The notes: generated from the letters alone by a model not told the origin. 64,000 nucleotides of DNA from IMGVR_UViG_3300022744_000022:124001-188000; one strand, 5' to 3'; positions 1,557 to 61,023 are shown, numbered from the stretch's first letter. Made by a program: numbers and translations.

Positions 1557-1562
1557 GGTGTA
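1557..1562 (+). promoter_or_regulatory. GGTGTA promoter-like element
   Basis: 9 nt before ATG 1572; back-to-back copy on minus strand at 1526-1531. Confidence 0.65.
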
Positions 1563-1571
1563 TGTACCCCC

Positions 1572-2030
1572 ATGGCATCGACTCCCACGATTTCTACTTC
1601 ACAGAATGTTGAGCGTCACCGGACCTTGTTGGGCAAGGAGCCCACTGGGATTCAGGTCCGCCTGTACGAAAACTTCCCTACGTTCCGAGGCTTCTCGGAT
1701 AAGACCCTAAACCCCGAGGTCTTGGAGGCCGTGATCGTTTTGGGTCTGACCTTCGGTACGGCGCAGGATCGAGTCTTTGTGCTAGCCCCTGTAGCGCATG
1801 AGGACTGGGTGCTCGAAGAGTTCAACAAGGTCACGGACCTTGTGTTCAACGAGTGCAAGAAGCACCCGCACCGAGCCCGAGTCGCCAAAGCTTACGGCAC
1901 GCTGTTCAAGAAGATGGCCATCATGGGTCGGCTGTTGCAGTTCAAGGAGGAGCCTGTTCGTTGGGTTTCGTTCGGTTTCTCCGCAGAAGATCCGATCCCT
2001 GAGTGGATGCCGCAACGCTTGCTCAAGTAG
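1572..2030 (+). CDS. Hypothetical protein
   Basis: 152 aa ORF, motif-linked start, convergent overlap with next gene. Confidence 0.75.
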   Translation: MASTPTISTSQNVERHRTLLGKEPTGIQVRLYENFPTFRGFSDKTLNPEVLEAVIVLGLTFGTAQDRVFVLAPVAHEDWVLEEFNKVTDLVFNECKKHPHRARVAKAYGTLFKKMAIMGRLLQFKEEPVRWVSFGFSAEDPIPEWMPQRLLK

Positions 2031-2457
2031 GCTCGTCCTCTTTGGCCAAGTGATCAAACAACGTGACCGGCGGTTGAACTGCTGTTGGGACGGGGACCGG
2101 CGGTTGAACTGTCGGGACGGCTTCGGGAGCTGCAACGGGCGTCCTGGTAACTGTTACGGTTCTGGTTTGGAACAGACCCCCGTCCGTTCGCTGCCGACGG
2201 CTTGTTGGCCGCTCACCGAGGAAGCCGTCGAAAACGTCGTCCATCCTGGTGAACACCTCATCCATTCGGTCAAAAGCCTCCGAGGAGATGTCCCTTCGAT
2301 ACAGACGCCGGGGCTGCTCTAGGGGGCGTTCGACCCGAGGTTGAGGGTCAGGGACAGGCTCTTGTCGAGGGGCAGGTTTGGGTCGGGTCCAGAGGTAGAT
2401 CAGGAGCGCCCCCAAAAGGACGCCTGTAATCAACATGCCGATTCCGATCAGGATCAT
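2023..2457 (-). CDS. N-terminal TM protein with C-terminal TLFDHL-acidic tail
   Basis: Hydrophobic N-terminus; GGTGTA 9 nt upstream; 17-nt repeat at 2065/2095 encodes VQPPV twice. Confidence 0.8.
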   Translation of the reverse strand: MILIGIGMLITGVLLGALLIYLWTRPKPAPRQEPVPDPQPRVERPLEQPRRLYRRDISSEAFDRMDEVFTRMDDVFDGFLGERPTSRRQRTDGGLFQTRTVTVTRTPVAAPEAVPTVQPPVPVPTAVQPPVTLFDHLAKEDEPT

Positions 2458-2513
2458 CCTCTAGGGTACACCGGACGAAAGCTCTTGTGCGCTCTGTACC
2501 TGTAGGAGAGTAG

Positions 2514-3110
2514 ATGGCCGCCCTCATGCTTCAAGTCCCTGCCGAGACTGCTCGTGTTCTGCACGAGCTTCCGGTCCCGGGCAATCGAGAACGTCACGAC
2601 CCTCATGTGACGGTCATGTACCTGGGTAAGGATCTGCCGATCGAACGTATTGGCGAGATGCTGCCCGTAATCTACAACGTGACTTCCAAGACGCTACCCT
2701 TTTCAGTGTCCACGAGCCACGTCACCTGCTTCCCTGGGGGCGATGACGGGGTGCCGGTGATTGCACAGATTGACTCACCGGCGTTGCACCGCTTCCGAGA
2801 GAAACTGGTGCAGGCGTTCGAGGCTGCCGACCTTCCCTACGACAACAAGTTCCCCGAGTACAAGCCGCACACCACTCTCGCGTACGATCCTGATCTCGAT
2901 ACGGAAGTGGACCTCGACATCCCCGAAGTCTCATGGGGGGCCCACGAGCTGGTTCTCTGGGGCGCTGATCGGGGGACGGGCCGTCTAGTGGTCAAGTTCC
3001 CGCTGAGCCTACCTGCGGGGAAGGTAGCGAGCACCGGGTCCCACGATGCGCTGTATCGAGCAGCCGTACGACTCTCACTCTGGGGTCAACGCGATAGGCT
3101 CGTGGGCTGA
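2514..3110 (+). CDS. 2H phosphoesterase (2'-5' RNA ligase/ThpR-like)
   Basis: Two HxT motifs (PHVTV, PHTTL) with typical spacing; AGGAG RBS. Confidence 0.85.
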   Translation: MAALMLQVPAETARVLHELPVPGNRERHDPHVTVMYLGKDLPIERIGEMLPVIYNVTSKTLPFSVSTSHVTCFPGGDDGVPVIAQIDSPALHRFREKLVQAFEAADLPYDNKFPEYKPHTTLAYDPDLDTEVDLDIPEVSWGAHELVLWGADRGTGRLVVKFPLSLPAGKVASTGSHDALYRAAVRLSLWGQRDRLVG

Positions 3111-3323
3111 ACTCTTTGGGGCAGGCTCTTTTTTGAGCATAACTAGGCAATGCGTGCATTTGGGGATGTGCCGGTCGTGAGACGGGTGTCGCCAAACGAA
3201 GCCGTCAGCCCGTGGTTTGAGTCGGCCACATAGCGGCCCATTGCCCGCGTGGAAGATCCAATGGGCCACAGGTTTACGGGACCCTCGGTAGAACCAAGCC
3301 CCTATACTGCCGATTCCTTGCAC
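3075..3323 (-). CDS. Small Cys/His protein
   Basis: AHW...LCG...CTHC pattern; start uncertain (GTG 3323 or 3359). Confidence 0.5.
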   Translation of the reverse strand: MQGIGSIGAWFYRGSRKPVAHWIFHAGNGPLCGRLKPRADGFVWRHPSHDRHIPKCTHCLVMLKKEPAPKSSAHEPIALTPE

Positions 3324-3393
3324 ACCCTTGAATTCCCACAAGAAAAATCCACCTACCACAAAATCTCACGTTGTAGGTGAAGCGCTCTAGCCC

Positions 3394-4074
3394 CTATTCG
3401 TCATCTGCCATGAGCAGGTGATCGAACAACGTGAGGGGTTTGGGGCCGGTGATTGCAGTGAATGCCCCAGGCACCACGGTGATCTGAAAGGCCACAGCTT
3501 CTCGCAGGCTATCGATCTGGTGCGTCTGACTCTTGAGCCGGTAACCCTCAGGCACCGCTTGCTGTGCCACGGCGTTGAGATCTTGCCCCACGATCAACCT
3601 ACGGTCCCGGCTAGCGTGGACGCAGTACGTACCGCATCTGGGGCAGAGCCAAAATGTCGTATTCGAGGGGAGCACCTCATTCAGGACTTCGTTGGTCTCA
3701 ACCCCGGAGCAGGAAGCGGGGTTCCAGCAGAGCTTTCCCAGGAAGGAAGCGGCGGCCACTTTCTGGGTAAGCACTTGGGATTGCACGCCTCTTGGGGCAT
3801 GGTTCGGACACACAACCTCGGGTTCCGCCTGACGGGGACGCTCATATCGCAAGAAGGCATGGTCTGAGCAAAACCGTCTAGAGCACTCTTGCCAGCACTC
3901 AGGGGCGGCCCGCTTGAACTGCCACGTGGTGTACTGCCGGTTGAACCCGACGGCTGCCCGTACCCCCGTCAGACTCACGAACGTTACGGTAGTCCCGTCC
4001 ACCCAAGCCACGATCCCCTCGACTCCCGAATGAGTGTCGGTCCAGGTTTCTCCAACTTTAGGTAAGGGCAGCAT
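3394..4074 (-). CDS. Hypothetical Cys-rich (zinc-binding) protein with TLFDHL-acidic tail
   Basis: 226 aa, several CxxC-like pairs, ends PLTLFDHLLMADDE. Confidence 0.8.
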   Translation of the reverse strand: MLPLPKVGETWTDTHSGVEGIVAWVDGTTVTFVSLTGVRAAVGFNRQYTTWQFKRAAPECWQECSRRFCSDHAFLRYERPRQAEPEVVCPNHAPRGVQSQVLTQKVAAASFLGKLCWNPASCSGVETNEVLNEVLPSNTTFWLCPRCGTYCVHASRDRRLIVGQDLNAVAQQAVPEGYRLKSQTHQIDSLREAVAFQITVVPGAFTAITGPKPLTLFDHLLMADDE

Positions 4075-4091
4075 CTTCTTTTGTTGCGTTT

Positions 4092-4110
4092 GGTGTAGAA
4101 GGGCTACACC
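4092..4110. promoter_or_regulatory. Face-to-face pair of GGTGTAG elements between divergent genes
   Basis: GGTGTAG-AAGGG-CTACACC inverted repeat. Confidence 0.55.
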
Positions 4111-4123
4111 GAGTCCCGTAACG

Positions 4124-4558: not shown

Positions 4559-4577
4559 CACAGAAGGAGAAAGTACG

Positions 4578-17884: not shown

Positions 17885-18811
17885 ATGATGAAGACACGCC
17901 GAATCGATTCTCGGGACGAAAACGTTTCTAAGTACGTTTTCGATTTCGACTCAGCCGTAGCTGAGTCGGTGCTGTACAAGTACCCGACCTACGAAGCTCG
18001 TACGGTCATCTGCTGCTCCACGCAGAGCGGTTGCCCAGTGGGCTGCCGTTTCTGCGGGGCAGGAGATGCCTTCGTCCGCTCTCTGACAGCAGACGAAATC
18101 GTGGGACAGGTCCAGCACTTGTTTGCGGACCGCAACATCGACCCCACCAAGGTCGAACGCTGCCAGATCATGTTCATGAGCATGGGCGAGCCGCTCTTGA
18201 ATCTCGCGGGGCTCGCACCTGCAATTCGACGGCTGAACCAACTCTACCCTAAGGCTGCTCTGCTTATCAGCACCTCAGCCCCCAAGGTGGACTACGCTCA
18301 GGTGCGTGACCTCTCGGTAGAGGTTGACAAGGTGGGGCTCCAGTTCTCAGTGCATGAGAGTCTGGATGAGCGCCGTAACGCTCTTGTCCCGTTCAAGGCG
18401 AAGCTGACGCTTGCCGAGATTGCGGTTGAAGGTGAGGCCTGGTTCGAGGCCACGGGCCGTCAGCCCTTCTTCAACTACTGTGCGCATTCCGAGAACGTGT
18501 CGGATCAAGATGCCGACCGGCTCATGGCGCTCTACAAGCCGGGGATCTGGCAAGCCACGATCAGTGTTGTGTGTGAACGCGACGAATCGGTGGCGGCAGC
18601 CAACCAACGGCAACGAGAACTCGCTGCAAACTTCATGACGAAGTTGAGTGAACGAGGCTTCTCCACGCGGTGCTTTGACCCGGCGGGTCAAGACGATATC
18701 GGGGGCGGGTGCGGCCAACTTTGGTTCGTCCAAGATTGGATGCGCCGTCACCCCAAGCTTGCCAAACGCAGTGTGGGTCACGGCCTGCCTGTGATCCACA
18801 CCCCAACCTAA
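17885..18811 (+). CDS. RlmN/Cfr-family radical SAM RNA methyltransferase-like
   Basis: CSTQSGCPVGCRFC, MSMGEPLLN, DIGGGCGQL. Confidence 0.85.
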   Translation: MMKTRRIDSRDENVSKYVFDFDSAVAESVLYKYPTYEARTVICCSTQSGCPVGCRFCGAGDAFVRSLTADEIVGQVQHLFADRNIDPTKVERCQIMFMSMGEPLLNLAGLAPAIRRLNQLYPKAALLISTSAPKVDYAQVRDLSVEVDKVGLQFSVHESLDERRNALVPFKAKLTLAEIAVEGEAWFEATGRQPFFNYCAHSENVSDQDADRLMALYKPGIWQATISVVCERDESVAAANQRQRELAANFMTKLSERGFSTRCFDPAGQDDIGGGCGQLWFVQDWMRRHPKLAKRSVGHGLPVIHTPT

Positions 18812-18825
18812 CAACGGAGAACACC

Positions 18826-18963
18826 ATGGGCGGAGATACGTACCTCGACAAGATTGCAGAAGGCGAAGCAGCGCCGGAACCTCAAACCCCCGAACCCGAG
18901 CCCCAGCCGGTCGGGACGGCGGCACCCCTCGAAACCCCCGAGGCTGAGACCCCTCAGCCGTAA
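18826..18963 (+). CDS. 45-aa acidic Pro/Glu-rich peptide
   Basis: GGAG RBS, MGGDTY start. Confidence 0.55.
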   Translation: MGGDTYLDKIAEGEAAPEPQTPEPEPQPVGTAAPLETPEAETPQP

Positions 18964-18992
18964 GTCAACAACCAACCTGAAAGGCAACTACC

Positions 18993-19970
18993 ATGGGCGG
19001 CACAATGTGGAGCAGTGAGCTGTACGAAGATCGTGCAGCAACCAGAGCAAAGACGGGGACCCCGACGTTTGCTCATGACGCAGCAGTGCGTACGGGCCGA
19101 ACGGCCAAGAAGGCTCACGCCTCGCTTGAGCCGCACGGAGTCAAGGTGCGGGAGTCCAGGGACTCGGACGCACACCCGAATTCGTTGGCTATCGGCGTCG
19201 TCTTTGACGAGACGGGTTCGATGCACACGATTCCGGGCATCGTGCAGAAGAAGCTGACCAAGCTCATGGAGATCCTGCTCGACAAGAAATACTGCGAGGA
19301 CCCTCAGATCCTCGTGGGCGCTGTCGGTGATGCACGCTCGGACAGCGTGTCGTTGCAGATGGGGCAGTTTGAGTCGGGCATCGAGATCGATGAGCAGCTC
19401 GGGCACATCTACCTCGAAGCCAACGGTGGTGGCGGGGAACCCCAGGAAAGCTACCAGAACGCGCTGTACTTCTTCGCCAACAAGACCAGCATCGATTGCT
19501 GGGAGAAGCGGGGCAAGAAGGGCTTCCTGTTCATCATCGGAGACGAGAAGCCCTACGGGGCATCCACGCCGGAGGAGATCAACCGGATCTTCGGCGACGT
19601 GGTGCAAGAGAACGTGCTGACCACGGACTTGGTTCGCAAGGTCAAGGAGCGCTACCACGTCTTCTACCTGATGCCCAGCGGCACCATGCACTACAAGGAG
19701 CCGGGCATCGTCAACGCCTGGAACAGCCTTCTGGGTGCTGAGAACGTGATCATGCTCGATGACCCCAACCTCGTGGCTGAGACCATCGGGGCTACCGTGG
19801 GTATGGTTGAGAATGCGATCTCGCTCGATGCGATGACCACCGATCTCGGTGGCGGCAAGGATGCCCTGGTGGTCCGTGCAGCTCTGGATCGTCTCGCCCC
19901 GGCCGCTGCATCGGCCAAGGGTGGCGTCCCGGCGGCAACGACCAAGGGCGGCTCGAACGTTCGTCTGTGA
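18993..19970 (+). CDS. von Willebrand A (MIDAS) domain protein
   Basis: VVFDETGSM MIDAS; GGGGEPQESY; FIIGDE. Confidence 0.85.
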   Translation: MGGTMWSSELYEDRAATRAKTGTPTFAHDAAVRTGRTAKKAHASLEPHGVKVRESRDSDAHPNSLAIGVVFDETGSMHTIPGIVQKKLTKLMEILLDKKYCEDPQILVGAVGDARSDSVSLQMGQFESGIEIDEQLGHIYLEANGGGGEPQESYQNALYFFANKTSIDCWEKRGKKGFLFIIGDEKPYGASTPEEINRIFGDVVQENVLTTDLVRKVKERYHVFYLMPSGTMHYKEPGIVNAWNSLLGAENVIMLDDPNLVAETIGATVGMVENAISLDAMTTDLGGGKDALVVRAALDRLAPAAASAKGGVPAATTKGGSNVRL

Positions 19971-19975
19971 TCCCT

Positions 19976-20005
19976 AGGGGCCGGGGGCAAGCACCTCCGG
20001 CCCCT
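19976..20005 (+). terminator. GC-rich hairpin after the vWA gene
   Basis: GGGGCCGGGGG-CAAGCA-CCTCCGGCCCC, weak T tail. Confidence 0.45.
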
Positions 20006-20014
20006 TCAAACCCT

Positions 20015-20200
20015 ATGCCAAAACGCAAGTTCAAGAACCCGAAAGCTAAAGCCTGGGACGTTGCCGCTCATGGCCTAGCGGTGTGGCTGGGTGAACGTTG
20101 TTTGGCGAACGACGAAACGGTCCAGCACATCAAAGACCACATCCTCCCGTCCATGAGGCGACGGGCTGAGATCATCGAGAGGAACACCAAACATGGGTAA
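20015..20200 (+). CDS. Small basic protein
   Basis: Start ATG 20015; overlaps next start. Confidence 0.6.
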   Translation: MPKRKFKNPKAKAWDVAAHGLAVWLGERCLANDETVQHIKDHILPSMRRRAEIIERNTKHG

Positions 20201-21521
20201 CGCGATTCTTCTGGCTGGTCTTGGCTTCGGGGATGAGGGCAAGGGCTCCGTCATCGACCACCTTACGCACACCACCGGCGCTACCCTGGTCGTTCGCTAC
20301 AACGGCGGGGCACAAGCGGCCCACAACGTGATTACGAACCGAGGCTTCCACCACACGTTCGCTCAATTTGGATCCGGCACCTTCGCAGGGGCCAAGACTC
20401 ATCTGAGTCGGCACATGCTCGTGAACCCCAACAACCTCTTGAACGAGGCCAAGGCTCTTGAGGGGCTCGGGTTCGACCCCCTGGACCTGATCACTCTTGA
20501 ACGAGACGCCCTCGTCACGAACATGTTCCAGGTAACCGCGAACCGTCTTCGTGAGGCTCACCGTGGGAAAGGGCGTCACGGGTCCTGTGGCCTTGGAATC
20601 GGGGAAACGGTGGCGGATGCTCTCCAGCACCCGGATCAAGCGTTGCGTATCGGTGACCTCCAGGATCGCGAGCTGACCCGCAAGAAGCTCACGTTTTCCC
20701 GTGACCTAAAGTTCGCCGAGTTCGGTGGACGAGGACCTTCTGTAGATCACCCCTTCAGCGATCAGCGTCTTGAATTCTACCTAGACCTCTACGCGGACTT
20801 CGCCAAACGCTATCAAATCGTGGACCGGCAGTACCTTGAGCAGCAGCTCAAGCAAGAAGGCACCGTGATCTTCGAGGGGGCTCAGGGCGTCCTATTGGAT
20901 CAGGACTACGGATTCCACCCGTACACAACGTGGTCCGACACGACCTTCGGCAATGCCCACGACCTGCTCCAAGGGTTCGATGGGCCGGTACGTAAGATTG
21001 GCGTGCTCCGGGGCTACATGACCCGGCACGGTGCGGGACCTTTCCCGACCGAGCTACCTGACGACGTTCGATTGGACTGCGACATCCAAACGGACCTGCA
21101 CAACAAGTGGGGTGAATTTCAACGGCACTTCAGGGTCGGGCATTTCGATGCCGTGTTGGCCCGTTACGCCTTGGAAGTCATTGGGGGTGTGGACGAGTTG
21201 GCGATCACCAACCTCGATAAGCTCGGGGCAAAGCCGCAGATCTGCCCAAGCTACCGTGACGACTTCGGTCGCAAAGTTCACCGCATCGCGCCCAAGAAGC
21301 TCGATGACTTCATGTTGGAACAAGGTGCCCACCACTGGACGCGGATCTTACCCACCTTGAAGCCCAACTACGTGACGCTGCCTGATCGAGTCAGCATCGT
21401 AGACTGCATCGCCGAAGAACTTAGAACCTCTGTGACGCTGTGCTCAGTCGGACCCAAGACCCAGCATAAGTGGCCAACCCGTTACCTCCGAGACCTACAG
21501 GCGAGCCAATGGAACTCCTGA
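20193..21521 (+). CDS. Adenylosuccinate synthetase-like (divergent PurA family)
   Basis: GFGDEGKG, RYNGGAQAAH, FEGAQGVLLD, HPYTTWS. Confidence 0.88.
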   Translation: MGNAILLAGLGFGDEGKGSVIDHLTHTTGATLVVRYNGGAQAAHNVITNRGFHHTFAQFGSGTFAGAKTHLSRHMLVNPNNLLNEAKALEGLGFDPLDLITLERDALVTNMFQVTANRLREAHRGKGRHGSCGLGIGETVADALQHPDQALRIGDLQDRELTRKKLTFSRDLKFAEFGGRGPSVDHPFSDQRLEFYLDLYADFAKRYQIVDRQYLEQQLKQEGTVIFEGAQGVLLDQDYGFHPYTTWSDTTFGNAHDLLQGFDGPVRKIGVLRGYMTRHGAGPFPTELPDDVRLDCDIQTDLHNKWGEFQRHFRVGHFDAVLARYALEVIGGVDELAITNLDKLGAKPQICPSYRDDFGRKVHRIAPKKLDDFMLEQGAHHWTRILPTLKPNYVTLPDRVSIVDCIAEELRTSVTLCSVGPKTQHKWPTRYLRDLQASQWNS

Positions 21522-22705
21522 CCATCGCCACCAACATCAAGGCTGCCAAGTGCCCTGAGGACATCTTCGGTGGCCCTCCGGATGGCAGCACCGTTACGCC
21601 GGTCTACCGCCAGCTCATCCTCGTGATCCACCCTGATCACTTCGATGGAAAGCCCACAGAGCTGGCCACTGCCACGGAAGCATTCCGGCTCCTGGCTCAG
21701 CTCCGGGGTGAGGCCGAACGCAAGATCAAGGCGGGCAAGTACGGCCAGAAGAAGGTCAAGGCACCGCCACCCAAAGAGCCCTTCCGCCCCTCAGTGGTTG
21801 AGGCCAACGGCAAGCGCTACATCTTGACGGATCAGGTTGCCTCGGGGGACCTGTGCGACATCTTCCTGTGTACGATCTCCAACGGATCTGCCGACCACAA
21901 AGCCATTTTTAAGATCGTCAAGAACGGGGCTGACAACGATCTCGTTGAAAACGAGATCAAGGTACTTGCGAAGCTCCACGCGCCTGGGGTCAAGTTCGAC
22001 GAACGCTTTTTCCCGAAAACGAACGACTCGTTCGTCATCCGGGGACCCGGGTTTCAACGTCAAGTCAACGTCCTGTCGTGGTTTCCAGAGCACCGAGGAC
22101 TTGACGAGGTGCTGAGAGTCTTCCCGGACGGCATCGACTACCGTGACATGGTGTGGATGTTCAAACGCATCCTGCACGGCGTAGGGTTCGCCCACGAGAA
22201 CCAGATCGTACACGGGGCCCTGATCCCGCCTCACATCCTGATCCACCCGGTGGACCACGGGGCCAAAATCATCGATTGGTCGTATGCGGTGGACATTACG
22301 CCTAAAGTCAAGGCGGTCAAACCCAAGACTCACCGCAGCCTTTACGACCTCTTGGACGCGGACGACATCCTTACTCCAGACCCGCACGTCAAGGCAATCA
22401 GCGCCGACTACAAGTTGTATTACCCGCCGGAGATCCTTAAGAAAGAGATCCCGACGCCCGCCAGCGACATTTACATGGCAGCCAAGTGTGCGGTAGCCTT
22501 GGTGGGTGGTGACTTGAAAACGAACGCAATGCCCAACGAGATCCCTGGAACTGTCCGGGCCTTCTTTGAGCGTTGCCTTCATGCGGTTCCGGCCAAGCGT
22601 CCGCAGAACATGTGGGACGCCCATGAGGAGCTGGACCGAATCTTGAAAGCAGCCGTGGGCAAACGAACTTACCGACCCTTCCCCATGCCTGAGGTACGCC
22701 CGTGA
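21509..22705 (+). CDS. J-domain-like N-terminus fused to Ser/Thr kinase-like domain
   Basis: YRQLILVIHPD; IFKI...NE; IVHGAL..HILI...IIDWSYA...YYPPE. Confidence 0.8.
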   Translation: MELLTIATNIKAAKCPEDIFGGPPDGSTVTPVYRQLILVIHPDHFDGKPTELATATEAFRLLAQLRGEAERKIKAGKYGQKKVKAPPPKEPFRPSVVEANGKRYILTDQVASGDLCDIFLCTISNGSADHKAIFKIVKNGADNDLVENEIKVLAKLHAPGVKFDERFFPKTNDSFVIRGPGFQRQVNVLSWFPEHRGLDEVLRVFPDGIDYRDMVWMFKRILHGVGFAHENQIVHGALIPPHILIHPVDHGAKIIDWSYAVDITPKVKAVKPKTHRSLYDLLDADDILTPDPHVKAISADYKLYYPPEILKKEIPTPASDIYMAAKCAVALVGGDLKTNAMPNEIPGTVRAFFERCLHAVPAKRPQNMWDAHEELDRILKAAVGKRTYRPFPMPEVRP

Positions 22706-24531: not shown

Positions 24532-24555
24532 CCCCTGTACTACACCGAACGGACT

Positions 24556-28464: not shown

Positions 28465-28600
28465 GTCTCCTTGTACTACACCGACAAGCCAAGGGCTAGG
28501 GGCAAACGGGCAAGAAACGATTCCCTGGACGCCACAGGACGATCCGGTGTAAAGCAGAAACAGGGAACCCATCGCTAGCTGTGGGTGAGGTGCGTACAGA

Positions 28601-29029
28601 GTGGCCCGGACCAGACAACGATTCACGAGCAAGGTGACGGTTAGGACAACGCTGCCGTTAGGTCGTAGTGAAACGCTCGGTTCGGTGCAGAACAAGCAAA
28701 TCCGGCGTCCCGATGCCCCCGGGTACATCACGGGGATGCTGGGTAAGTGGTTCCTCGTGTTGCATGAGGGGGAAACGACCCCCGCTATCTACAACCCAGA
28801 GGAACTCAGGCTTGAGCCGCACGCCTACTGGCGGGTCACCCACACCCTGGCAGGACAGCCCTACTTCAAGGAATTCGGAACCTACCGCGAGGTCGAGAAG
28901 CATTTGAAAGCGCTGGGCAAGTTGGGCGGTGTAGCCCTTGGTATCGAAGGCCCTTTCTACTCCGCAAAGGAGTTGGAAGAGGGGCCTGTCCCCACCCGAA
29001 ATCTTTTTGATCATTTGAACGACGCATGA
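28601..29029 (+). CDS. Hypothetical protein ending RNLFDHLNDA
   Basis: Coupled to next gene by ATGA; start uncertain. Confidence 0.7.
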   Translation: MARTRQRFTSKVTVRTTLPLGRSETLGSVQNKQIRRPDAPGYITGMLGKWFLVLHEGETTPAIYNPEELRLEPHAYWRVTHTLAGQPYFKEFGTYREVEKHLKALGKLGGVALGIEGPFYSAKELEEGPVPTRNLFDHLNDA

Positions 29030-29409: not shown

Positions 29410-29441
29410 TCCCGTACGCACGCCCGGTGTACTGGCCCGGG

Positions 29442-35231: not shown

Positions 35232-35272
35232 TTGACGTTCTGCGGTCATCCGGTGTAATAGTGGACGGTGTA
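35232..35272 (+). promoter_or_regulatory. TTGACG -35 box plus tandem GGTGTA elements
   Basis: TTGACG-N16-TGTAAT; second GGTGTAGTA at 35267. Confidence 0.55.
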
Positions 35273-37767: not shown

Positions 37768-37787
37768 GATGGACCAGATTACACCAG

Positions 37788-39050: not shown

Positions 39051-39076
39051 TACACCGGGGCTTGGGAAAACTCTAG
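39051..39076 (-). promoter_or_regulatory. CTAGAGTT-N12-GGTGTA promoter
   Basis: 8 nt before ATG 39042. Confidence 0.7.
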
Positions 39077-39096: not shown

Positions 39097-39381
39097 GTGA
39101 AAACCTTACGCGAACGCCTTCAAGACTGGCACGATTGCGATGTTGCCGAATATGAACTCGGCGTAACTCTTGGGCTTTGGCCAGAATGGGGCGGCGGGCC
39201 TCCTGGGGAAGACCCTTGGCATGGGCACAAAGGCGTCTTTTGGACCGCCAACCCCCTGGGGACCATGCTTCACGAGACCTTGGTGAGCCTGACTACACTC
39301 GGGATGCTGGAATCGAGGGAAGACGGGTTGAGCTTCCGGTGGAACCCTGCTTGGGACTCGAATTCGTTGAAGGGTGCCTAG
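39097..39381 (+). CDS. Hypothetical protein
   Basis: Start GTG 39097. Confidence 0.7.
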   Translation: MKTLRERLQDWHDCDVAEYELGVTLGLWPEWGGGPPGEDPWHGHKGVFWTANPLGTMLHETLVSLTTLGMLESREDGLSFRWNPAWDSNSLKGA

Positions 39382-39403
39382 AGTTTCTCTGCTCTCCGGT
39401 GTA
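39378..39403 (+). promoter_or_regulatory. CTAGAGTT-N12-GGTGTA promoter
   Basis: 8 nt before ATG 39412. Confidence 0.7.
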
Positions 39404-39411
39404 GTACCAAC

Positions 39412-42727: not shown

Positions 42728-42951
42728 CCAGCGTGGCAGTCGTAAGCGCCCGAGAATGTGGCGAGAATTCGTTCCGTGAATGTGGTGGGACGCCCTTCGG
42801 GGCACTGTGCCAAGGGGATGGGCAGGCTTTTCACTTGCTCGGCATCGAGCCCAACAGAGCTACCGCATGCCTCACAACGATACATTGACCAGCGGTAACC
42901 CTCGGTCTGAATCTGCGAATCTAGCTTGAACAGGTGTACTCGTTTGGCCAC
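42724..42951 (-). CDS. Small Cys-containing protein
   Basis: GGTGTA 9 nt before GTG 42951; CEAC. Confidence 0.6.
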   Translation of the reverse strand: MAKRVHLFKLDSQIQTEGYRWSMYRCEACGSSVGLDAEQVKSLPIPLAQCPEGRPTTFTERILATFSGAYDCHAG

Positions 42952-43012
42952 AGACAAGACTACACCAAAAGCGCTTGGATCTGGTGCTGCCGTGCGCTAC
43001 AGAGCACAGAAG

Positions 43013-43182: not shown

Positions 43183-43734
43183 ATGGGCCACCCCGCAGGT
43201 AGCTTCTGTTCCCTTTGTCTCAAATCTGAGTCAGAGGTCCCCCGCTTGATTGTGAGCGGCACGATGGCAGCGGTTTGCACCGAGTGCATTCAGCTCTGCA
43301 ACGAGATTTTGGAGGGGGACGACGAGCCTTTCACAGAGGAACCCCCGCCCCGCTACGTGGGTGGCGAGAGACCCCCTGTGCTCCCCGATACGCTCTCGAT
43401 CGAGCTGTTCTACCACGCCACCGAGGTGATGCTGAACACGTTGGTGCTCTCGGGAGAACCCCAGCCCTATAGTACGGTGGCCCCCATCGTGGGCTACCAC
43501 CACCGGGACCGGAACTTCTATCGCATGCTCGGGCGGTCCCTACGTGAGGACCACGCCGCTGGACGCCCCCTCAGGGCCTCCATGGTCATCAACAAGGCTC
43601 TGGGGATGCCTGGGCAGGCCTACTTCATGGTCTGCCGTGAGCTGGGCCTGGAAGTCCCCAAGGGCGGTGAAGCGGCCTTCTGGACTGCCCAGCTCGACCG
43701 CCTCGCCCTAGAGTTTTCCGAAGTCCAAGTGTAG
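43183..43734 (+). CDS. ClpX C4-type zinc-binding domain fused to an unknown domain
   Basis: FCSLCLKSESEVPRLIVSG...VCTECIQLCNEIL. Confidence 0.8.
   Translation: MGHPAGSFCSLCLKSESEVPRLIVSGTMAAVCTECIQLCNEILEGDDEPFTEEPPPRYVGGERPPVLPDTLSIELFYHATEVMLNTLVLSGEPQPYSTVAPIVGYHHRDRNFYRMLGRSLREDHAAGRPLRASMVINKALGMPGQAYFMVCRELGLEVPKGGEAAFWTAQLDRLALEFSEVQV
43708..43733 (+). promoter_or_regulatory. CTAGAGTT-N12-AGTGTA promoter embedded in a CDS end
   Basis: 9 nt before ATG 43743. Confidence 0.6.
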
Positions 43735-43742
43735 TACCCTCC

Positions 43743-43961: not shown

Positions 43962-43997
43962 GTGCGGATTTAGGGCGGCGGCGGTGTAGCCTAAAGG

Positions 43998-44399
43998 ATG
44001 AGCACAGGCGTCAAACAAGTGATCGTGGTCCGTAAAGACCTCAACATGCGCAAGGGTAAAATTGCTGCCCAGGTTGCGCACGCGGCCATGATGTTCCTGA
44101 TCAAGCCCGCCGAGGTCTACTGGGCTACAGACACTGTGGCTTCGTTCAAGACCCTGGTGACCCCACACCAACACGCTTGGCTCACCGGGTCCTTCACGAA
44201 GGTCGTGCCTTACTGCAACTCCGAGGCCGAGTTACGCGACCTAATCCAGAAAGCCCGAGATGCAGGAGTTGTGGTTCACGAGTGTACAGACAACGGTCTC
44301 ACCGAGTTCCACGGGGTCAAGACGCTCACCTGTGCCGCTTTTGGTCCCGATCTACCGGCAGTTCTCGACCCGATCACCGGCCACCTGTCCTTGTTGTGA
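43998..44399 (+). CDS. pth2: Peptidyl-tRNA hydrolase 2
   Basis: KQVIVVRKDLNMRKGKIAAQVAHA...DNGLTEF...T.TC..FGP...TGHLSLL. Confidence 0.92.
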   Translation: MSTGVKQVIVVRKDLNMRKGKIAAQVAHAAMMFLIKPAEVYWATDTVASFKTLVTPHQHAWLTGSFTKVVPYCNSEAELRDLIQKARDAGVVVHECTDNGLTEFHGVKTLTCAAFGPDLPAVLDPITGHLSLL

Positions 44400-44409: not shown

Positions 44410-44435
44410 CTAGAGTTCTACCCTTCCCATGTGTA
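44410..44435 (+). promoter_or_regulatory. CTAGAGTT-N12-TGTGTA promoter followed by a leader with SD
   Basis: GGAGAGG before ATG 44457. Confidence 0.6.
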
Positions 44436-44456
44436 GTACCGGGAGAGGTTACGGCC

Positions 44457-45129: not shown

Positions 45130-45155
45130 CTAGAGTTTAGCCTCTCTCCGGTGTA
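45130..45155 (+). promoter_or_regulatory. CTAGAGTT-N12-GGTGTA promoter overlapping a hairpin (45118-45151)
   Basis: 9 nt before ATG 45165. Confidence 0.7.
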
Positions 45156-45164
45156 GTAGTAATC

Positions 45165-47946: not shown

Positions 47947-47965
47947 TCTGTAGAGTACACCGGGT

Positions 47966-50443: not shown

Positions 50444-50533
50444 GGCTCTTATCTACACCGGCTGGCTCTGTTGAAAAAGGCTCTTGACGCCCCACTAGGT
50501 CTTCTGTCAGTCTCCTGCCTGTAGTGGGCTCAG

Positions 50534-50655: not shown

Positions 50656-52074
50656 ATGTCCAAGACCCTTGGGGCCCTGCGTGCCCTGTTGCGTGAGGGG
50701 TTGTCCGTCGAACAAGACGGCAACCTCGTGTGTGTTCGGCCTCTAAACCACCCTGACGGCCTCCCGGCGGAAGTGCTGCTTCCCCGGGATCACCCGCTCG
50801 AACCGAAGGCTCTCAAACAGCTCTCGGATTTCGCACAGGTGCGTCACCCGGCAGGCGGGGAGGTCCTGCAAGCGTTCGCCACCCCGGACTTCCACCCGGG
50901 ATCCGTGGTGCCGATCGGGTGCGTCTTGGCCACCAGCCAAGACATCGTGATCCCCGATGCCATTGGGACCGATATCAACTGCGGAATGCGTATGCATATT
51001 GCGGACTTGACGGTCGATCAGCTCATGGCCAAAAAGCCCGAGTGGCTCAAGGCCATGAAGGGCGACCTGTTGATGAGCACTCGGGACCTTCCGATGTCGG
51101 TGGCTCAGATCAGGGCGATGTTCCGCACAGGACCGTTTGGGTGGCTCGAAGAAGTCGGGAAGCGGCCCTTGGGTATGCTGGGGCGCTCGGACCTCAGGCA
51201 GCTCCAGGGGGAGCTAGACCAGAGCTTCGGGCTCGGGAGCCTCGATGGGGATGACCGTTACGCCCCACAGGAAATGATGCCGGAGGACCGGGACACCATC
51301 CGGGACTGCTTCATCGGCACCATTGGGGGCGGCAACCACTTCGTGGAACTCCAGGTTGTCGAGGAGATCTTGGACAAGGGTTGGGCGTTCCGGTGGGGGA
51401 TCAGGAAGAACCAGATCGCCGTGATGGCCCACTCAGGGTCCCGTCGAGTTGGCATCATCGTGGGGCAGTCCTGGATGCAGCATGCCCGGGAGCGGTGGCC
51501 CCAAGGAGTCCCGCACCCTGAGAACGACATCTTCGCCCTGCACGGCAAGGATGCCTTGGCCTACGTGACCGCGATGAACACGGCAGCCAATTACGCGGCG
51601 GTGAACCGGCTCTTGCTTGTGGAGATGGTCCGGGACCGGCTCCGCCAGAGCTTCCCCGGGCTTGAGCTACCGCTGGTGTTCGACGCCCCGCACAACATCG
51701 TGACCCAAGAGAACGGGTTCATGATCCACCGGAAGGGCGCTACGCCTGCCCACCTGAATCAGCCGGTCCTGATCCCGGGCTCCATGGGACAACCGAGCTT
51801 CTTGATGGTCGGGCACGGCAACCAACGCTTTCTACAGTCAGCCTCGCACGGGGCGGGTCGGAAACTGTCCAGGCGAGACATGCACCGGCTCGACAAGCAA
51901 GGCCTGGACCTTGGGCTCGATGCCGTGGAGTGCATCACGCTCAAGAATGAGCGGCTCGTGCAAGAAGCGCCCGCTGCCTACAAGGACATCGGTCCCGTGG
52001 TGCAGGTGCAGGCTGAGGCGGGGATTGCTTCGCCGGTAGCGAGGATGCGGCCGTTGCTGACGTTCAAGGGGTAA
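50656..52074 (+). CDS. rtcB: RtcB RNA ligase
   Basis: PDFH, DINCG, GGGNHF.E, HSGSR, HRKGA, PGSMG, SHGAGR, EAPAAYK. Confidence 0.93.
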   Translation: MSKTLGALRALLREGLSVEQDGNLVCVRPLNHPDGLPAEVLLPRDHPLEPKALKQLSDFAQVRHPAGGEVLQAFATPDFHPGSVVPIGCVLATSQDIVIPDAIGTDINCGMRMHIADLTVDQLMAKKPEWLKAMKGDLLMSTRDLPMSVAQIRAMFRTGPFGWLEEVGKRPLGMLGRSDLRQLQGELDQSFGLGSLDGDDRYAPQEMMPEDRDTIRDCFIGTIGGGNHFVELQVVEEILDKGWAFRWGIRKNQIAVMAHSGSRRVGIIVGQSWMQHARERWPQGVPHPENDIFALHGKDALAYVTAMNTAANYAAVNRLLLVEMVRDRLRQSFPGLELPLVFDAPHNIVTQENGFMIHRKGATPAHLNQPVLIPGSMGQPSFLMVGHGNQRFLQSASHGAGRKLSRRDMHRLDKQGLDLGLDAVECITLKNERLVQEAPAAYKDIGPVVQVQAEAGIASPVARMRPLLTFKG

Positions 52075-55731: not shown

Positions 55732-55964
55732 GGTTTGCCCTTACACCGTCGCAGCCACTGATCGACCCAGAGTGTCCACCGTGTCAGGCGCGAGAGATCC
55801 CCGTGGGCTTGCAGCCACTTGGCATTCTCGACGTGGTACACCCACACCCAGGGCAACCAGATCGTGAAGAAAAAAGCCACGACGCCCAGGCAACCAAGCA
55901 GGATAAGGGCACCGCCGAACGCTTCCATCAACTTAGCTCTGTCCACCGGCGGCCCTCCAGGCAT
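55728..55964 (-). CDS. Small membrane protein
   Basis: One TM; start ATG 55964. Confidence 0.6.
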   Translation of the reverse strand: MPGGPPVDRAKLMEAFGGALILLGCLGVVAFFFTIWLPWVWVYHVENAKWLQAHGDLSRLTRWTLWVDQWLRRCKGKP

Positions 55965-56118: not shown

Positions 56119-56142
56119 CCCCTGCACTACACCAACCCGTAA

Positions 56143-57569: not shown

Positions 57570-57591
57570 TGGCCCCTTTGTACACCGAAAG

Positions 57592-57617
57592 CTAGAAGTT
57601 TTCTGCCAGTTGGTGTA
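57592..57617 (+). promoter_or_regulatory. CTAGAAGT-N12-GGTGTA promoter, back-to-back with a minus-strand copy at 57581-57586
   Basis: Divergent intergenic region of 62 nt. Confidence 0.6.
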
Positions 57618-57631
57618 ATGTTTATTCAGCC

Positions 57632-58918: not shown

Positions 58919-59522
58919 GCTCTTGCGCTACACCATCGGCCATGGCCTGCGCTTGGAAGAAAGCCCGCTTCTTAGCACAAGAGGTGCCTTCCAAGGGACA
59001 TGTAGGTCCCGTTCGCTTAGCCCAATTACAATTTGCGCACAAAGTCTGAAAGCCTGGGGGAAATTTCTGCGCCACCAACCAAGAAAAAATCTGCGTGACT
59101 TTCTTACGGTGCTCTCTACCCCCACCGGCTACATGATCAATTTGCAGTAACCTCTCTTCTGGCTCTCCACAACAAGCACAAGCCTTCCCGTAATGTGCAA
59201 AGCATGCTAAACGGTCACGTTCGTAACGAGCTGTGGCCCAACGTCGAGCAGCAAATCGGTGATCCGCGTAATACCTGTTGTTGTAGTCAAAACACCTAGG
59301 GCATTTCCGATACCCCTCTTTGACTGGACGCCCGCACTCGCAAATCCCGCGATCCCGTAGTTTCTTCTTGCGGTTAGCCCGGTATTCATTCTGGACCAGA
59401 TTACAAGGGTCACAATGATTCTTGGATACGCCCGGCTGAAATGGCTGGCGGCACTTCATACAGAGCCCCGCCTCTTTGAAGCGTTTTCTACGTGCCTTCT
59501 CTGCTTCAGATGCGGCTGACAT
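58881..59522 (-). CDS. HNH endonuclease with N-terminal zinc fingers (homing-type)
   Basis: CACCGE...LQIDH..GGG...FQTLCANCN; more A/T-rich than its neighbours. Confidence 0.85.
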
Positions 59523-60063
59523 TCTCCTGAAGCATCTTTATAAATAGTTCCCCCTGTTCCTGTGCATCGGACAGGGCGACATGGGTATGGGGGTTCTTGG
59601 AAAACCAACGCTTGGGCATGTTCCGCTTAGTAGCCTTTCGGAAGTCGCTCTTGAGCATGCACATGGCGAACGTCTTGATGTCTAGGCCGGAGAACGAGAA
59701 GGGGCTCTCGCCCGCGAACCTGATCAAGTACCAGTACACGAACATGAAGTCGTACGTGGCGGGGTACCCGACGAACACAGGCTTGCCAGGAAGGCCCTTG
59801 AGCCACTCTAGGTAGCCCTTCATGGCATCCACGGGGGTCACAAGGCCTTGACGGCACGCTGCCCAAGCCTCGGGCTGCCCCGCCCACCATTCGGCGGTTT
59901 TGGGGTCTGCGGAGGCCCCTGGTAGCGTTTCTAGATTCCGCGTGAAGGTGTCGAGCAACGTGCCCTCTGACGAGAAGGCAGCGGATCCGAAGCTCAGCAT
60001 CGAGTTGGGGCCGGGGATTGGGCCGTCGGATTTAATGTCTGTGGAGACGTAGATTTCTTGCAT
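59506..60063 (-). CDS. DEDDh 3'-5' exoribonuclease-like protein; first motif reads DIK
   Basis: [27 protein letters not shown]. Confidence 0.85.
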
Positions 60064-60072
60064 CCTGGCCGC

Positions 60073-60089
60073 TACACCAAGCCGGTGTA
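60073..60089. promoter_or_regulatory. Back-to-back GGTGTA pair between divergent genes
   Basis: TACACC-AAGCC-GGTGTA; 9 and 10 nt from the two starts. Confidence 0.7.
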
Positions 60090-60099
60090 CTCTGCCCGG

Positions 60100-60522
60100 G
60101 TGCTCATCAACCTACTCGGCCCGATCATCCTTGCACCGTACGCGGATCGGGATGAACTCAGCTTCTTGACCAAGGACACGCGCCCTAAGGGCCTCGTGAC
60201 TGTGATCCACGACGGCCTTGTGTACAAACAGCAAGGGGGCGAGCGGCAGGTCTTGGTTGAGGCGTACTGGCAAGTCCAAGAAGGTGTGATCCGAACCGCA
60301 ATCCCGCTCAACCAAGCCTGTGGGCATAAGTTCTACTGTGGACACGTCTGGACCTCAGAACACGGCGAGTTCAACGTCAACAACCGCATCGTCTCAGTGT
60401 GCCTCAATGACGACATCTTGATCGTTACCCCTACGGGCGGGCAACCGCTGATGCTTGACCTTGGGCTAAAGATGGAAATCACGCAGGAAAAGCGAACCCT
60501 CTGGGATCTCTTGGCTGACTAG
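60100..60522 (+). CDS. Hypothetical protein ending [10 protein letters not shown]
   Basis: Start moved to GTG 60100. Confidence 0.7.
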
Positions 60523-60544
60523 GACGCCTGGTGTATAGAGCGCC

Positions 60545-60925
60545 ATGCCAGATATCAATCCAGGGATCCGCCTTACCGTCGGGATGTTGAACGCAGCCGG
60601 ACACAAAACCACTGACTCGGGGGATGGCGAAACCCGCGACTTCACGTGCGATCGTGAAAAACCCTACGTGGTCGTGGTTTCGACCCCCGAGCGCCTCGTT
60701 CAAGAAGCTCAAGAGATCGTCCAACTCTTGAAGGCCAACGGGATCTTGGTTTCGCCCATCGGGGACGACGAAGCCGGTGGCGTACAAATCCAAGCTACCT
60801 ACGACCCCAGCATGGGGCAGGAACACGGCGCAGCACTGATCGATCTTTCCGGGATTCACGACCGGATGCTGCCGCCGGTCATCATTTTCATGGGGCCCTG
60901 CGTGCCCTTTTGCACAGGCAGTTGA
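60545..60925 (+). CDS. Hypothetical protein
   Basis: TTDSGDG..PYV; GGTGTA 9 nt upstream. Confidence 0.75.
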   Translation: MPDINPGIRLTVGMLNAAGHKTTDSGDGETRDFTCDREKPYVVVVSTPERLVQEAQEIVQLLKANGILVSPIGDDEAGGVQIQATYDPSMGQEHGAALIDLSGIHDRMLPPVIIFMGPCVPFCTGS

Positions 60926-61023
60926 AAACAAGCCTTGCGCCCTTCTCGGTCGGTGTAGTAGAACCGGGTGTCCTTGAATCGGTGTAGTAAGGGGACCCGG
61001 ACTACCCGGCGAGAAAGAGTCGA

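What the first reader, a model, noticed from the sequence alone, without database searches (positions are those of the whole stretch)
1557..60986. Recurrent GGTGTA element fixed 8-10 nt before start codons: probable leaderless-transcript promoter
GGTGTA (or NGTGTA) lies 8-10 nt before the starts at 1572, 2457(-), 13848(-), 13901, 15244, 24531(-), 29442, 39042(-), 39412, 42951(-), 43743, 43998, 45165, 47946(-), 50443(-), 55731(-), 56118(-), 60063(-), 60100 and 60545. It lies 11-14 nt before 28464(-), 37767(-), 57569(-) and 57632. It marks mainly operon heads and divergent junctions, often as back-to-back pairs, and most of these genes lack an SD. The spacing places the TSS on or near the start codon. 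It is not a standard TANNNT -10 box, which suggests a phage-encoded or alternative sigma factor (inference). It also corrects several ORF-track starts.
Basis: partly seen in the sequence, partly recalled or inferred. Interest (0 to 1): 0.7.

Follow-up and report, generated by a model that had tools for sequence, protein, structure and literature searches.

The report
Phage promoter motif driving leaderless genes
An uncultured giant freshwater phage carries a short DNA signal with a GGTGT core 8-10 bases before about a quarter of its gene starts. It is most likely a compact phage-specific promoter that makes messenger RNAs beginning at the start codon; which enzyme or factor reads it is unknown.

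Summary
GGTGTA occurs 51 times in the window, against 16±4 expected. Twenty-three copies lie 8-11 nt before an ATG or GTG that opens an ORF.

The window is part of a 208-kb IMG/VR phage contig, which an ENA assembly joins to a second contig (291 kb in total). GTGTA at a gap of 9-10 nt is the top position-specific 5-mer before starts in this phage and in two relatives, one with only 49% PolA identity. It is not enriched in a 485-kb phage or in 20 bacterial genomes.

The consensus is Y-GGTGTA-R, with no -35 element and no conserved T at the -7 position. Motif genes lack an SD. They are enriched at divergent junctions and rare at tightly coupled internal genes. The motif is invariant in orthologous upstream regions whose flanks have diverged.

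I found a second, composite class: CTAGAGTTY-N11-GGTGTnGTAC-N4-ATG, with invariant spacing. When either class lies further from the start codon, an SD usually appears. Two composite copies flank a non-coding hairpin. This argues for a promoter rather than a translation signal.

No transcript 5' ends could be obtained. No sigma factor or RNA polymerase is recognisable in the 291 kb. I rate it a new variant of a known kind.

The parts
1557..1562 (+). class II motif (C-GGTGTA-T), gap 9 to ATG 1572 (152 aa)
   Evidence: G001 homologue 84% identical over residues 8-152; GTGTA lies upstream of it.
2467..2472 (-). class II motif, gap 9 to ATG 2457 (144 aa)
   Evidence: G001 has the identical GGTGTACCCTAGAGG-ATG.
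13859..13864 (-). class II motif, gap 10 to ATG 13848 (92 aa). Back-to-back with 13886(+), 21 nt between the two motifs.
13886..13891 (+). class II motif, gap 9 to ATG 13901 (63 aa)
   Evidence: G001 homologue aligns from residue 1 with the motif in front.
14845..14850 (+). class II motif, gap 10 to GTG 14861 (125 aa).
15228..15233 (+). class II motif, gap 10 to ATG 15244 (Nudix plus NrtR-type winged helix, 388 aa). Heads the NAD-salvage genes.
24541..24546 (-). class II motif (GGTGTAGTAC), gap 9 to GTG 24531 (208 aa). Lies in a 24-nt divergent junction with ATG 24556.
28477..28482 (-). class II motif, gap 12 to ATG 28464 (238 aa). AAGGAG lies within the gap.
29426..29431 (+). class II motif, gap 10 to ATG 29442 (HNH-like, 131 aa)
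35267..35272 (+). class II motif (GGTGTAGTAGTA) 35 nt before GTG 35308. The leader contains GAAGGGA. A second copy lies at 35252.
37780..37785 (-). class II motif, gap 12 to ATG 37767 (92 aa)
39051..39076 (-). class I composite promoter: CTAGAGTTT (39068-39076), N11, GGTGTAGTAC, N4, ATG 39042 (63 aa)
39378..39407 (+). class I composite promoter: CTAGAGTTT, N11, GGTGTAGTAC, N4, ATG 39412 (94 aa)
   Evidence: The promoter is conserved in G001.
42961..42966 (-). class II motif, gap 9 to GTG 42951 (75 aa)
43708..43737 (+). class I composite promoter: CTAGAGTTT, N11, AGTGTAGTAC, N5, ATG 43743 (72 aa)
43983..43988 (+). class II motif, gap 9 to ATG 43998 (PTH2 peptidyl-tRNA hydrolase, 133 aa)
44410..44439 (+). 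class I composite promoter (CTAGAGTTC, N11, TGTGTAGTAC) with a 17-nt leader that carries GGGAGAGG before ATG 44457 (215 aa)
45130..45159 (+). class I composite promoter: CTAGAGTTT, N11, GGTGTAGTAG, N5, ATG 45165 (132 aa)
47956..47961 (-). class II motif, gap 9 to GTG 47946 (160 aa)
50454..50459 (-). class II motif, gap 10 to ATG 50443 (269 aa). Divergent from the RtcB gene.
55742..55747 (-). class II motif, gap 10 to ATG 55731 (96 aa)
56128..56133 (-). class II motif, gap 9 to ATG 56118 (61 aa)
57581..57586 (-). class II motif, gap 11 to ATG 57569 (229 aa). Back-to-back with 57612(+).
57612..57617 (+). class II motif, gap 14 to ATG 57632 (HD-domain protein, 258 aa)
   Evidence: G001 has GATGTA here.
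58929..58934 (-). class II motif, gap 10 to ATG 58918 (62 aa).
60073..60078 (-). class II motif, gap 9 to ATG 60063 (185 aa). Only 5 nt separate it from the divergent motif at 60084.
60084..60089 (+). class II motif, gap 10 to GTG 60100 (140 aa)
60530..60535 (+). class II motif, gap 9 to ATG 60545 (126 aa)
60981..60986 (+). class II motif (GGTGTAGTAAGG) 37 nt before ATG 61024. The leader contains GAGAAAGAG. A second copy lies at 60952.

Best explanation
The GGTGT-core element is the core, '-10-like' promoter of the non-structural genes of this phage family. It is placed so that RNA synthesis starts on, or 1-2 nt before, the A or G of the start codon. The resulting mRNAs have no leader and no Shine-Dalgarno sequence.

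There are two classes:
No upstream element is conserved. It can sit back-to-back with a divergent copy only 5-25 nt away.
- Class I, new here: CTAGAGTTY-N11-GGTGTnGTAC-N4/5-ATG. This is a rigid two-part element spanning about -34 to -5. It is often arrayed before successive small ORFs, which looks like an early-gene region.

When either class lies more than about 10 nt from the start codon, the gene usually has an ordinary SD-bearing leader.

What is shown: the positions, the spacing, conservation of the motif in relatives, depletion of SD, and the operon-head bias. What is inferred: the transcription start site itself and the temporal class of the genes.

The reading machinery is unknown. My rough odds are:
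- host RNA polymerase redirected by an unrecognised phage sigma-like or appropriator protein: 0.4
- a phage RNA polymerase encoded in the unsampled part of the genome, or too divergent to detect: 0.25
- the unknown host's own sigma: 0.25
For: 1. The spacing is fixed. GGTGTA shows gap peaks at 9 and 10 nt in three phage contigs, while the control word is flat. GTGTA at those gaps is the top 5-mer-by-gap signal in all three.
2. The element is compact and asymmetric. The consensus is Y-GGTGTA-R, with a pyrimidine before the motif in 91/98 sites, and upstream positions carry no information. Start-associated copies have the Y...R flanks in 75/98 cases, against 60/154 for other copies.
3. The motif is under selection. 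In 17 orthologous G000/G001 upstream regions, 101 of 102 motif cells are identical, while flanking columns are 53-82% identical. The motif persists in G002, whose PolA is 49% identical: 15 pattern matches against 1 for the control.
4. It marks transcription-unit boundaries. It precedes 33/92 divergent heads but only 13/145 genes with a same-strand gap of 15 nt or less. Divergent intergenic regions of 24-62 nt leave no room for another promoter plus a leader.
5. SD-like sequences are depleted before motif genes.
6. It acts independently of the start codon. Sense-oriented GGTGTA occurs in 30 of 203 longer upstream regions, against 3 for the control; leaders are 12-130 nt and many carry an SD. 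Among class I sites, 34 of 54 have ATG 4-5 nt after GTAC with no SD. Nine have leaders of 10-50 nt, and 7 of those carry an SD-like sequence. Two convergent class I copies flank a 165-nt non-coding hairpin.
7. The geometry fits a bacterial start site. With a gap of 10, TA falls at -12/-11. C is enriched at -1 (49/87) before the purine of the start codon.
8. Canonical sigma-70 promoters are absent from a 16-kb stretch full of divergent units: 0 found against 2.8 expected.
9. The class I spacer is invariant: 11 nt in all 52 sites when 6-18 nt was allowed.
Against: No transcript 5' ends are available. The only RNA run gave unrelated scraps.

No sigma factor or RNA polymerase was found that could read the motif.

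The motif lacks the T at -7, and in class I also the A at -11, that sigma-70-family -10 elements need.

GGTGTA is not depleted inside coding regions: 38 copies against roughly 44 expected. So the hexamer alone may not be sufficient for promoter activity.

Thirteen motif sites lie at tightly packed internal genes.

My gene calls are home-made, and the later set gave a bonus to SD-bearing and motif-bearing starts. The SD contrast from that set is therefore inflated. The neutral set still shows it.
Confidence: 0.75

Rival explanations
1. The motif is an operator or activator box for a phage DNA-binding protein, comparable to a MotA box. It overlaps promoters whose real core elements are too weak to see, so it regulates transcription rather than constituting the promoter.
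For: No polymerase or sigma has been identified. HTH proteins are present, including a 127-aa protein with a sigma region-4-like helix-turn-helix at window 29026-29409 and an XRE-type protein at 10176-10700. The hexamer is not depleted in coding DNA.
Against: No other conserved element exists around class II sites. There are no sigma-70-like promoters in the region. The element sits exactly where a -10 element must sit relative to the start codon, with a tolerance of only 1-2 nt. It is asymmetric and present as a single copy. Divergent pairs 5 nt apart leave no space for separate core promoters.
Confidence: 0.1
2. The motif acts in the RNA as a translation-initiation element inside a short 5' UTR. 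It would be an alternative ribosome-binding site, or a start-associated sequence like those of Cluster K mycobacteriophages.
For: The motif lies at a fixed distance from start codons and replaces the SD. GGUG can pair with the CACC of the 16S rRNA tail (established knowledge).
Against: Only 4 of the 6 invariant bases could pair with the anti-SD. GGAG in this phage ends 5-8 nt before starts, so in-register GGUG should end 2-5 nt before them; it actually ends 11-12 nt before. The motif also occurs 12-130 nt upstream of genes that carry their own SD, and before a non-coding hairpin. Divergent junctions of 24-62 nt would require promoters buried inside the neighbouring gene. Class I has a second conserved element at about -30, with invariant spacing.
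Confidence: 0.06
3. The motif is an RNA-processing signal. A phage or host endonuclease cuts polycistronic RNA a fixed distance downstream of GGUGUA and so creates leaderless mRNAs.
For: The spacing is fixed, SD is absent, and some sites lie inside tightly packed operons.
Against: The motif is enriched at divergent heads, where no upstream same-strand transcript is expected. The class I upstream element at about -30 and its rigid spacing look like DNA recognition. I know of no nuclease that cuts at a 9-10-nt ruler distance from such a site (own knowledge).
Confidence: 0.04

Closest known systems
Leaderless-gene promoters of Actinobacteria and Deinococcus: a -10 TANNNT element a few nt before the start codon, with the transcription start on the AUG/GUG (PMC4007540; PMC4633059, cited there)
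   Same: A -10-position element lies at a fixed short distance from the start codon. There is no SD. TA can be placed at -12/-11. ATG and GTG starts are both used.
   Different: The sequence is GGTGTA, with four invariant bases upstream of TA, and there is no conserved T at -7. In class I even the A varies. The signal is specific to one phage family and is absent from 20 diverse bacterial genomes.
Phage '-10-only' promoters read by phage-modified host polymerase: T4 late TATAAATA with gp55/gp33; phiEco32 gp36 promoters (own knowledge); Thermus phage P23-45 extended -10 middle and late promoters (PMC7403470; that they are leaderless is my own knowledge)
   Same: A single compact element of about 8 bp at -10 with no -35 element, phage-specific and present in many copies. 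P23-45 transcripts are largely leaderless.
   Different: The consensus is different, and TG abuts TA instead of the TGn-TA arrangement. No phage sigma or appropriator could be identified. Class I has a second rigid upstream element.
Promoters of the non-virion RNA polymerases of jumbo phages: AR9 AACA-N6-TA/G and phiKZ TATG (PMC5312081)
   Same: Very short motifs within about 11 nt of the start site, in a giant phage, with no resemblance to host promoters.
   Different: AR9 leaders are 26-491 nt, and no leaderless phiKZ transcript was detected. No split beta or beta-prime genes and no catalytic NADFDGD motif were found here.
Start-associated sequences of Cluster K mycobacteriophages (own knowledge)
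   Same: A conserved short motif lies at a fixed place before a subset of phage start codons.
   Different: The start-associated sequence contains the SD and is thought to act in translation. The motif here excludes an SD and also works at a distance from start codons.

Membership tests
sigma-70-type -10 element (TANNNT / TATAAT) | Conserved A at -11 and T at -7 of a hexamer | tested here: not met
   TA is invariant in class II, but T at the -7-equivalent position is 10/46. In class I the A itself varies: A 30, G 15, T 9.
sigma-70-type -10 element (TANNNT / TATAAT) | The hexamer ends about 5-8 nt before the transcription start | tested here: inconclusive
   If the start is the A/G of the start codon, TA falls at -12/-11 (gap 10) or -11/-10 (gap 9). 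The start site itself has not been measured.
extended -10 promoter (TGnTATAAT) | TG at -15/-14, separated by one base from the hexamer | tested here: not met
   In GGTGTA the TG abuts TA directly, and the GG further upstream is also invariant.
two-element sigma-70 promoter (-35 TTGACA, spacer 17 +/- 1, -10) | A TTGACA-like -35 element with a 16-18 nt spacer | tested here: not met
   Class II has no upstream information. The class I upstream element is CTAGAGTTY with an invariant 11-nt spacer. The consensus scan found 0 sites in 16 kb.
Shine-Dalgarno / ribosome-binding site | Complementarity to the 16S 3' tail, and a spacing like that of the other SDs in the genome | tested here: not met
   Only GGUG can pair. 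It ends 11-12 nt before the start, while GGAG ends 5-8 nt before. The motif also co-occurs with separate SDs in leaders.
leaderless mRNA | The primary 5' end lies at the start codon, or within about 5 nt of it | not testable with these tools
   No run holds RNA of this phage. Leaderless status is inferred from spacing, absence of SD and junction size.
phage-encoded sigma-dependent promoter (T4 gp55-like, phiEco32 gp36-like) | A sigma-family gene in the phage | tested here: inconclusive
   There is no Sigma70_r2 or sigma70-ECF match in G000, G001 or G002, nor in the Pfam-annotated neighbouring contig. The only hit is a sub-threshold region-4-like HTH at window 29290-29400. The genome is incomplete, and gp55-like proteins are too divergent for these models.
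jumbo-phage non-virion / virion multisubunit RNAP promoters | Phage beta/beta-prime-like genes with the DFDGD catalytic loop | tested here: not met
   There is no Rpb1 domain 2 match and no NADFDGD-type motif in six frames. A conserved DSDGD lies in a 1448-aa protein that looks like a DUF4815 virion protein. The unsampled genome part remains open.
T7-type single-subunit RNAP promoter | A phage T7-like RNAP gene | tested here: inconclusive
   PF00940 found nothing, but the control search also found nothing anywhere.

The most novel reading that the evidence does not exclude
A clade of giant freshwater phages expresses more than 80 genes per genome as leaderless mRNAs. It does so from its own promoter grammar: a GGTGT core, either alone or with a rigid CTAGAGTTY element 11 nt upstream. 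This grammar would be read by a transcription factor or polymerase of a kind not yet recognisable by sequence.

The phage also encodes many tRNA- and translation-related enzymes: PTH2, RtcB, a CCA-adding enzyme, Thg1, an RF-1-domain protein and an amber-suppressor tRNA. Taken together, this would amount to a phage programme that separates its early and middle gene expression from SD-dependent host translation.
Probability: 0.25. Interest if true: 0.75.

Novelty: new variant of a known kind. Interest (0 to 1): 0.55.

Why it matters
Phage-specific promoters and leaderless transcripts are both known. A giant phage in which roughly a quarter of genes appear to be leaderless, behind a conserved motif that breaks the rules of sigma-70 -10 recognition, is unusual.

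It matters for three reasons:
- It gives a concrete handle on an unknown transcription specificity, whether a new sigma-like factor, an appropriator or a cryptic polymerase.
- It gives a practical rule for correcting gene starts and operon maps in this uncultured phage family.
- The compact promoters, especially the 30-bp class I element, could be tested as orthogonal expression parts once the reader protein is found.

Tried and rejected
- RNA evidence. No RNA run holds this DNA. The one 'related protein' metatranscriptome gave only scraps of 30-150 nt at under 90% identity, so it says nothing about 5' ends.
- Host identification. ClpX is 42-50% identical to homologues from many phyla, which is uninformative. 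Relatives cannot be drawn for a virus record. The host remains unknown; the sample is a freshwater metagenome.
- Host-promoter idea. Twenty genomes (Myxococcota, Bacillota, Cyanobacteria, Bacteroidota, Alpha- and Gammaproteobacteria, Fibrobacteria) show GGTGTA-N9-ATG at control frequency. This does not cover the true host.
- Polymerase and sigma search. See the membership table. A conserved DSDGD in the 1448-aa protein was followed up and dropped: it has DUF4815-like virion protein features, a weak tail-fibre PHROG hit and no PDB relative.
- More relatives through the composite pattern in IMG/VR. Large contigs with single matches were chance hits without the motif signal. The 485-kb phage LR745208.1, the best PolA hit among named phages at 31%, does not share the motif.
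- Intrinsic terminators are not enriched in window 36-52 kb: 14 found against 13.5 expected. They give no help in defining transcription units.
- Literature. No paper in the library links GGTGTA to a phage promoter. Berdygulova 2011 on P23-45 is not held.
- Late promoter. Inspection of the few intergenic regions of the structural module (1-60 kb) showed no shared motif.

Full report
**What the DNA is.** The window is bases 124001-188000 of a 208,486-bp IMG/VR virus contig with 58.7% G+C. CheckV rates it 44% complete. It encodes the following:
- a Baseplate-J protein and other tail proteins;
- family-A DNA polymerase, DnaB with an intein, an SNF2 helicase and ClpX;
- NAMPT with a Nudix/NrtR protein, and adenylosuccinate synthetase;
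- a CCA-adding enzyme, RtcB, PTH2 and an OmpA-domain protein.

So it is a very large tailed phage from a freshwater metagenome. An ENA assembly joins the right end of this contig to a second JGI contig of the same sample, Ga0228700_1000112 (82,756 bp). I verified 5,101 of 5,101 identical bases across the joint. That gives 291 kb of contiguous sequence.

**Checking the observation.** GGTGTA occurs 51 times in the window, against 16.0 ± 3.8 in shuffles. Two more sites were missed: the motif at 14845 before GTG 14861, and the motif at 58929(-) before ATG 58918.

Genome-wide there are 117 copies. The gap to an ATG/GTG that opens at least 50 codons is 9 nt in 21 cases and 10 nt in 20. The reversed control word never exceeds 2 at any gap. 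A scan of all 5-mers at all gaps from 0 to 29 nt before every possible start ranks GTGTA at gaps 9 and 10 first.

**Relatives.** The polymerase finds two related IMG/VR contigs: G001 (116 kb, 85% identity) and G002 (107 kb, 49% identity). Both show the same signal. Pattern matches are 12 against 1 for the control in G001, and 15 against 1 in G002. Both have the same 9/10 spacing, and GTGTA is again the top positional word.

The 485-kb phage LR745208.1 (PolA 31%) does not share the signal: 19 matches against 20 for the control. Nor do five complete large phages, five further partial virus contigs or 20 diverse bacterial genomes. The motif is a trait of one phage family.

**Anatomy.** In 98 start-associated sites the consensus is Y-GGTGTA-R. 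There is no information upstream and no T at the position corresponding to -7. C is enriched at -1 before the purine of the start codon (49/87), which fits the usual pyrimidine-purine preference at start sites.

In 17 orthologous upstream regions of G000 and G001, 101 of 102 motif cells are identical, while neighbouring columns are 53-82% identical. One ortholog pair switches the gap from 10 to 9 nt. In 8 of these the start there is preceded by GTGTA at a similar gap.

**Context.** I used my own gene calls: a frame-specific Markov model, with no SD or motif term in the first version. In that set, SD-like words precede 2 of 36 motif genes and 59 of 165 other genes.

I then pooled three contigs, using a caller that does reward SD-bearing and motif-bearing starts. 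In that set the motif precedes:
- 33 of 92 divergent heads;
- 24 of 77 genes with a same-strand gap of 16-60 nt;
- 13 of 145 genes with a same-strand gap of 15 nt or less (Fisher p = 1.8e-5).

Divergent start pairs lie only 24-62 nt apart, and the two motifs can be as close as 5 nt (60073/60084). That leaves no room for another promoter plus a leader. A consensus scan finds no sigma-70-type promoter in 16 kb of this region, against 2.8 expected.

**A second class.** Searching metagenome contigs with the composite pattern returned the window's own contig, its 82.7-kb neighbour and a dozen contigs from other samples. These represent new regions of the same phage family.

There are 54 distinct sites, and their consensus is CTAGAGTTY-N11-GGTGTnGTAC-N4/5-ATG. 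The spacer is 11 nt in all 52 sites found when 6-18 nt was allowed. The sixth base of 'GGTGTA' is free in this class (A 30, G 15, T 9), so the shared core is GGTGT.

The neighbouring contig holds 13 class I and 27 class II sites with a start codon 8-11 nt downstream in 78 kb. It includes eleven class I sites on the + strand within 6.3 kb, most directly before a small ORF. That looks like an early-gene array.

**Promoter or translation signal?** Four findings favour a promoter.
- Of the 54 class I sites, 34 have the start codon 4-5 nt after GTAC and no SD. Nine have leaders of 10-50 nt, and 7 of those carry an SD-like stretch.
- Sense-oriented GGTGTA also lies 12-130 nt before 30 of 203 other genes, against 3 for the control word, and often with an SD. 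Window examples are 35267, 44430 and 60981.
- Two convergent class I copies flank a 165-nt non-coding hairpin (z = -7 to -8.5) at the switch between leftward and rightward gene arrays.
- GGAG in this phage ends 5-8 nt before starts. GGUG in the same anti-SD register should therefore end 2-5 nt before them, not the observed 11-12 nt.

Together these argue that the element works on DNA, upstream of a fixed start point. The gene is leaderless simply when its start codon sits at that point.

**What reads it.** This is unknown. I found no Sigma70_r2, sigma70-ECF, T7-type or Rpb1-domain match, and no catalytic NADFDGD motif, in G000, G001 or G002. None appears in the other family fragments or in the Pfam annotation of the neighbouring contig.

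The only hit is a sub-threshold sigma region-4-like helix-turn-helix in a 127-aa protein at window 29026-29409. A conserved DSDGD in a 1448-aa protein was followed up; the protein looks like a DUF4815 virion protein.

Capsid, portal and terminase genes were not identified among the proteins I scanned, so part of the genome is probably missing. The element lacks the T at -7, and in class I also the A at -11, that sigma-70-family factors read. That fits a non-standard reader, but this is inference.

**Comparison with known systems.**
- The closest functional analogue is the -10 element placed just before the start codon of leaderless genes in Deinococcus and mycobacteria (PMC4007540). The sequence rules differ.
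- As a compact, phage-specific, -35-less element it resembles T4 late promoters, phiEco32 promoters and P23-45 extended -10 promoters (PMC7403470; the rest is my own knowledge).
- As a short motif next to the start site in a giant phage it resembles the AR9 and phiKZ non-virion polymerase promoters (PMC5312081). Those transcripts, however, have leaders of 26-491 nt or were never seen to be leaderless.
- No paper in the library links GGTGTA to a phage promoter.

**Verdict.**
- Observation: confirmed.
- Promoter-for-leaderless-mRNA reading: well supported by position, conservation, context and the behaviour of displaced copies. It is unproven without 5'-end data.
- Sigma-factor inference: open.
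- Novelty: a new variant of a known kind.

Noticed in passing
window 10711-10783 (+): A tRNA with anticodon CTA (an amber suppressor; ARAGORN calls it tRNA-Pyl) lies just after an XRE-type HTH gene. It is the only tRNA found in any of the three family contigs. TAG is still used as a stop in 15 of 72 long ORFs, and the structural genes are uninterrupted under code 11, so general recoding is not evident.
   Followed up: partly
L172:5042-5270 (contig Ga0228700_1000112, adjoining the right end of the window's contig): Two convergent class I promoters flank a 165-nt near-perfect hairpin (-94 to -97 kcal/mol, z = -7 to -8.5). It lies in a 1.26-kb non-coding gap where leftward and rightward arrays of small genes diverge. 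A relative (L179) keeps the same conserved sequence (GGAAAGCAGACGG) downstream of one class I promoter. It could be an antisense or double-stranded RNA locus, or an origin-like cruciform. It has no Rfam family.
   Followed up: partly
window 4092-4110: GGTGTA and its reverse complement face each other with 7 nt between them (GGTGTA-N7-TACACC). No start codon follows either copy. G001 has the same arrangement with a longer spacer. A similar facing pair lies at 42933/42961.
   Followed up: no
window 29026-29409 (+): A 127-aa protein whose C-terminus gives a sub-threshold match to sigma-70 region 4 (21.8 bits; cut-off 24.1). It lies directly upstream of a motif-led HNH-like gene. It is a candidate DNA-binding or polymerase-binding factor, but untested.
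   Followed up: partly
window 15244-23904, 26345-27529, 43998-44399 and 50656-52074; L191/L192 on the neighbouring contig: There is an unusual load of nucleotide, NAD, tRNA and translation genes: Nudix-NrtR plus NAMPT, a radical-SAM-like protein, adenylosuccinate synthetase, a protein kinase, a cytidylyltransferase-like protein, a CCA-adding enzyme, PTH2 and RtcB. The adjoining contig adds Thg1, an RF-1-domain protein and dCTP deaminase.
   Followed up: no
L012:15866-18637 (G000 69165-71936): The DnaB-like helicase is interrupted by an intein with a LAGLIDADG endonuclease domain.
   Followed up: no
G000 1-60000 (outside the window): The structural module consists of very large proteins of 1000-2065 aa, mostly without any family match. 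It has no start-associated GGTGTA, so late genes must use another promoter, which I did not find.
   Followed up: partly
G000 right end and Ga0228700_1000112: ENA contig k141_631761 (291,219 bp) joins the two JGI contigs, with 5,101 of 5,101 identical bases across the joint. The IMG/VR record therefore understates what has been assembled for this phage.
   Followed up: yes
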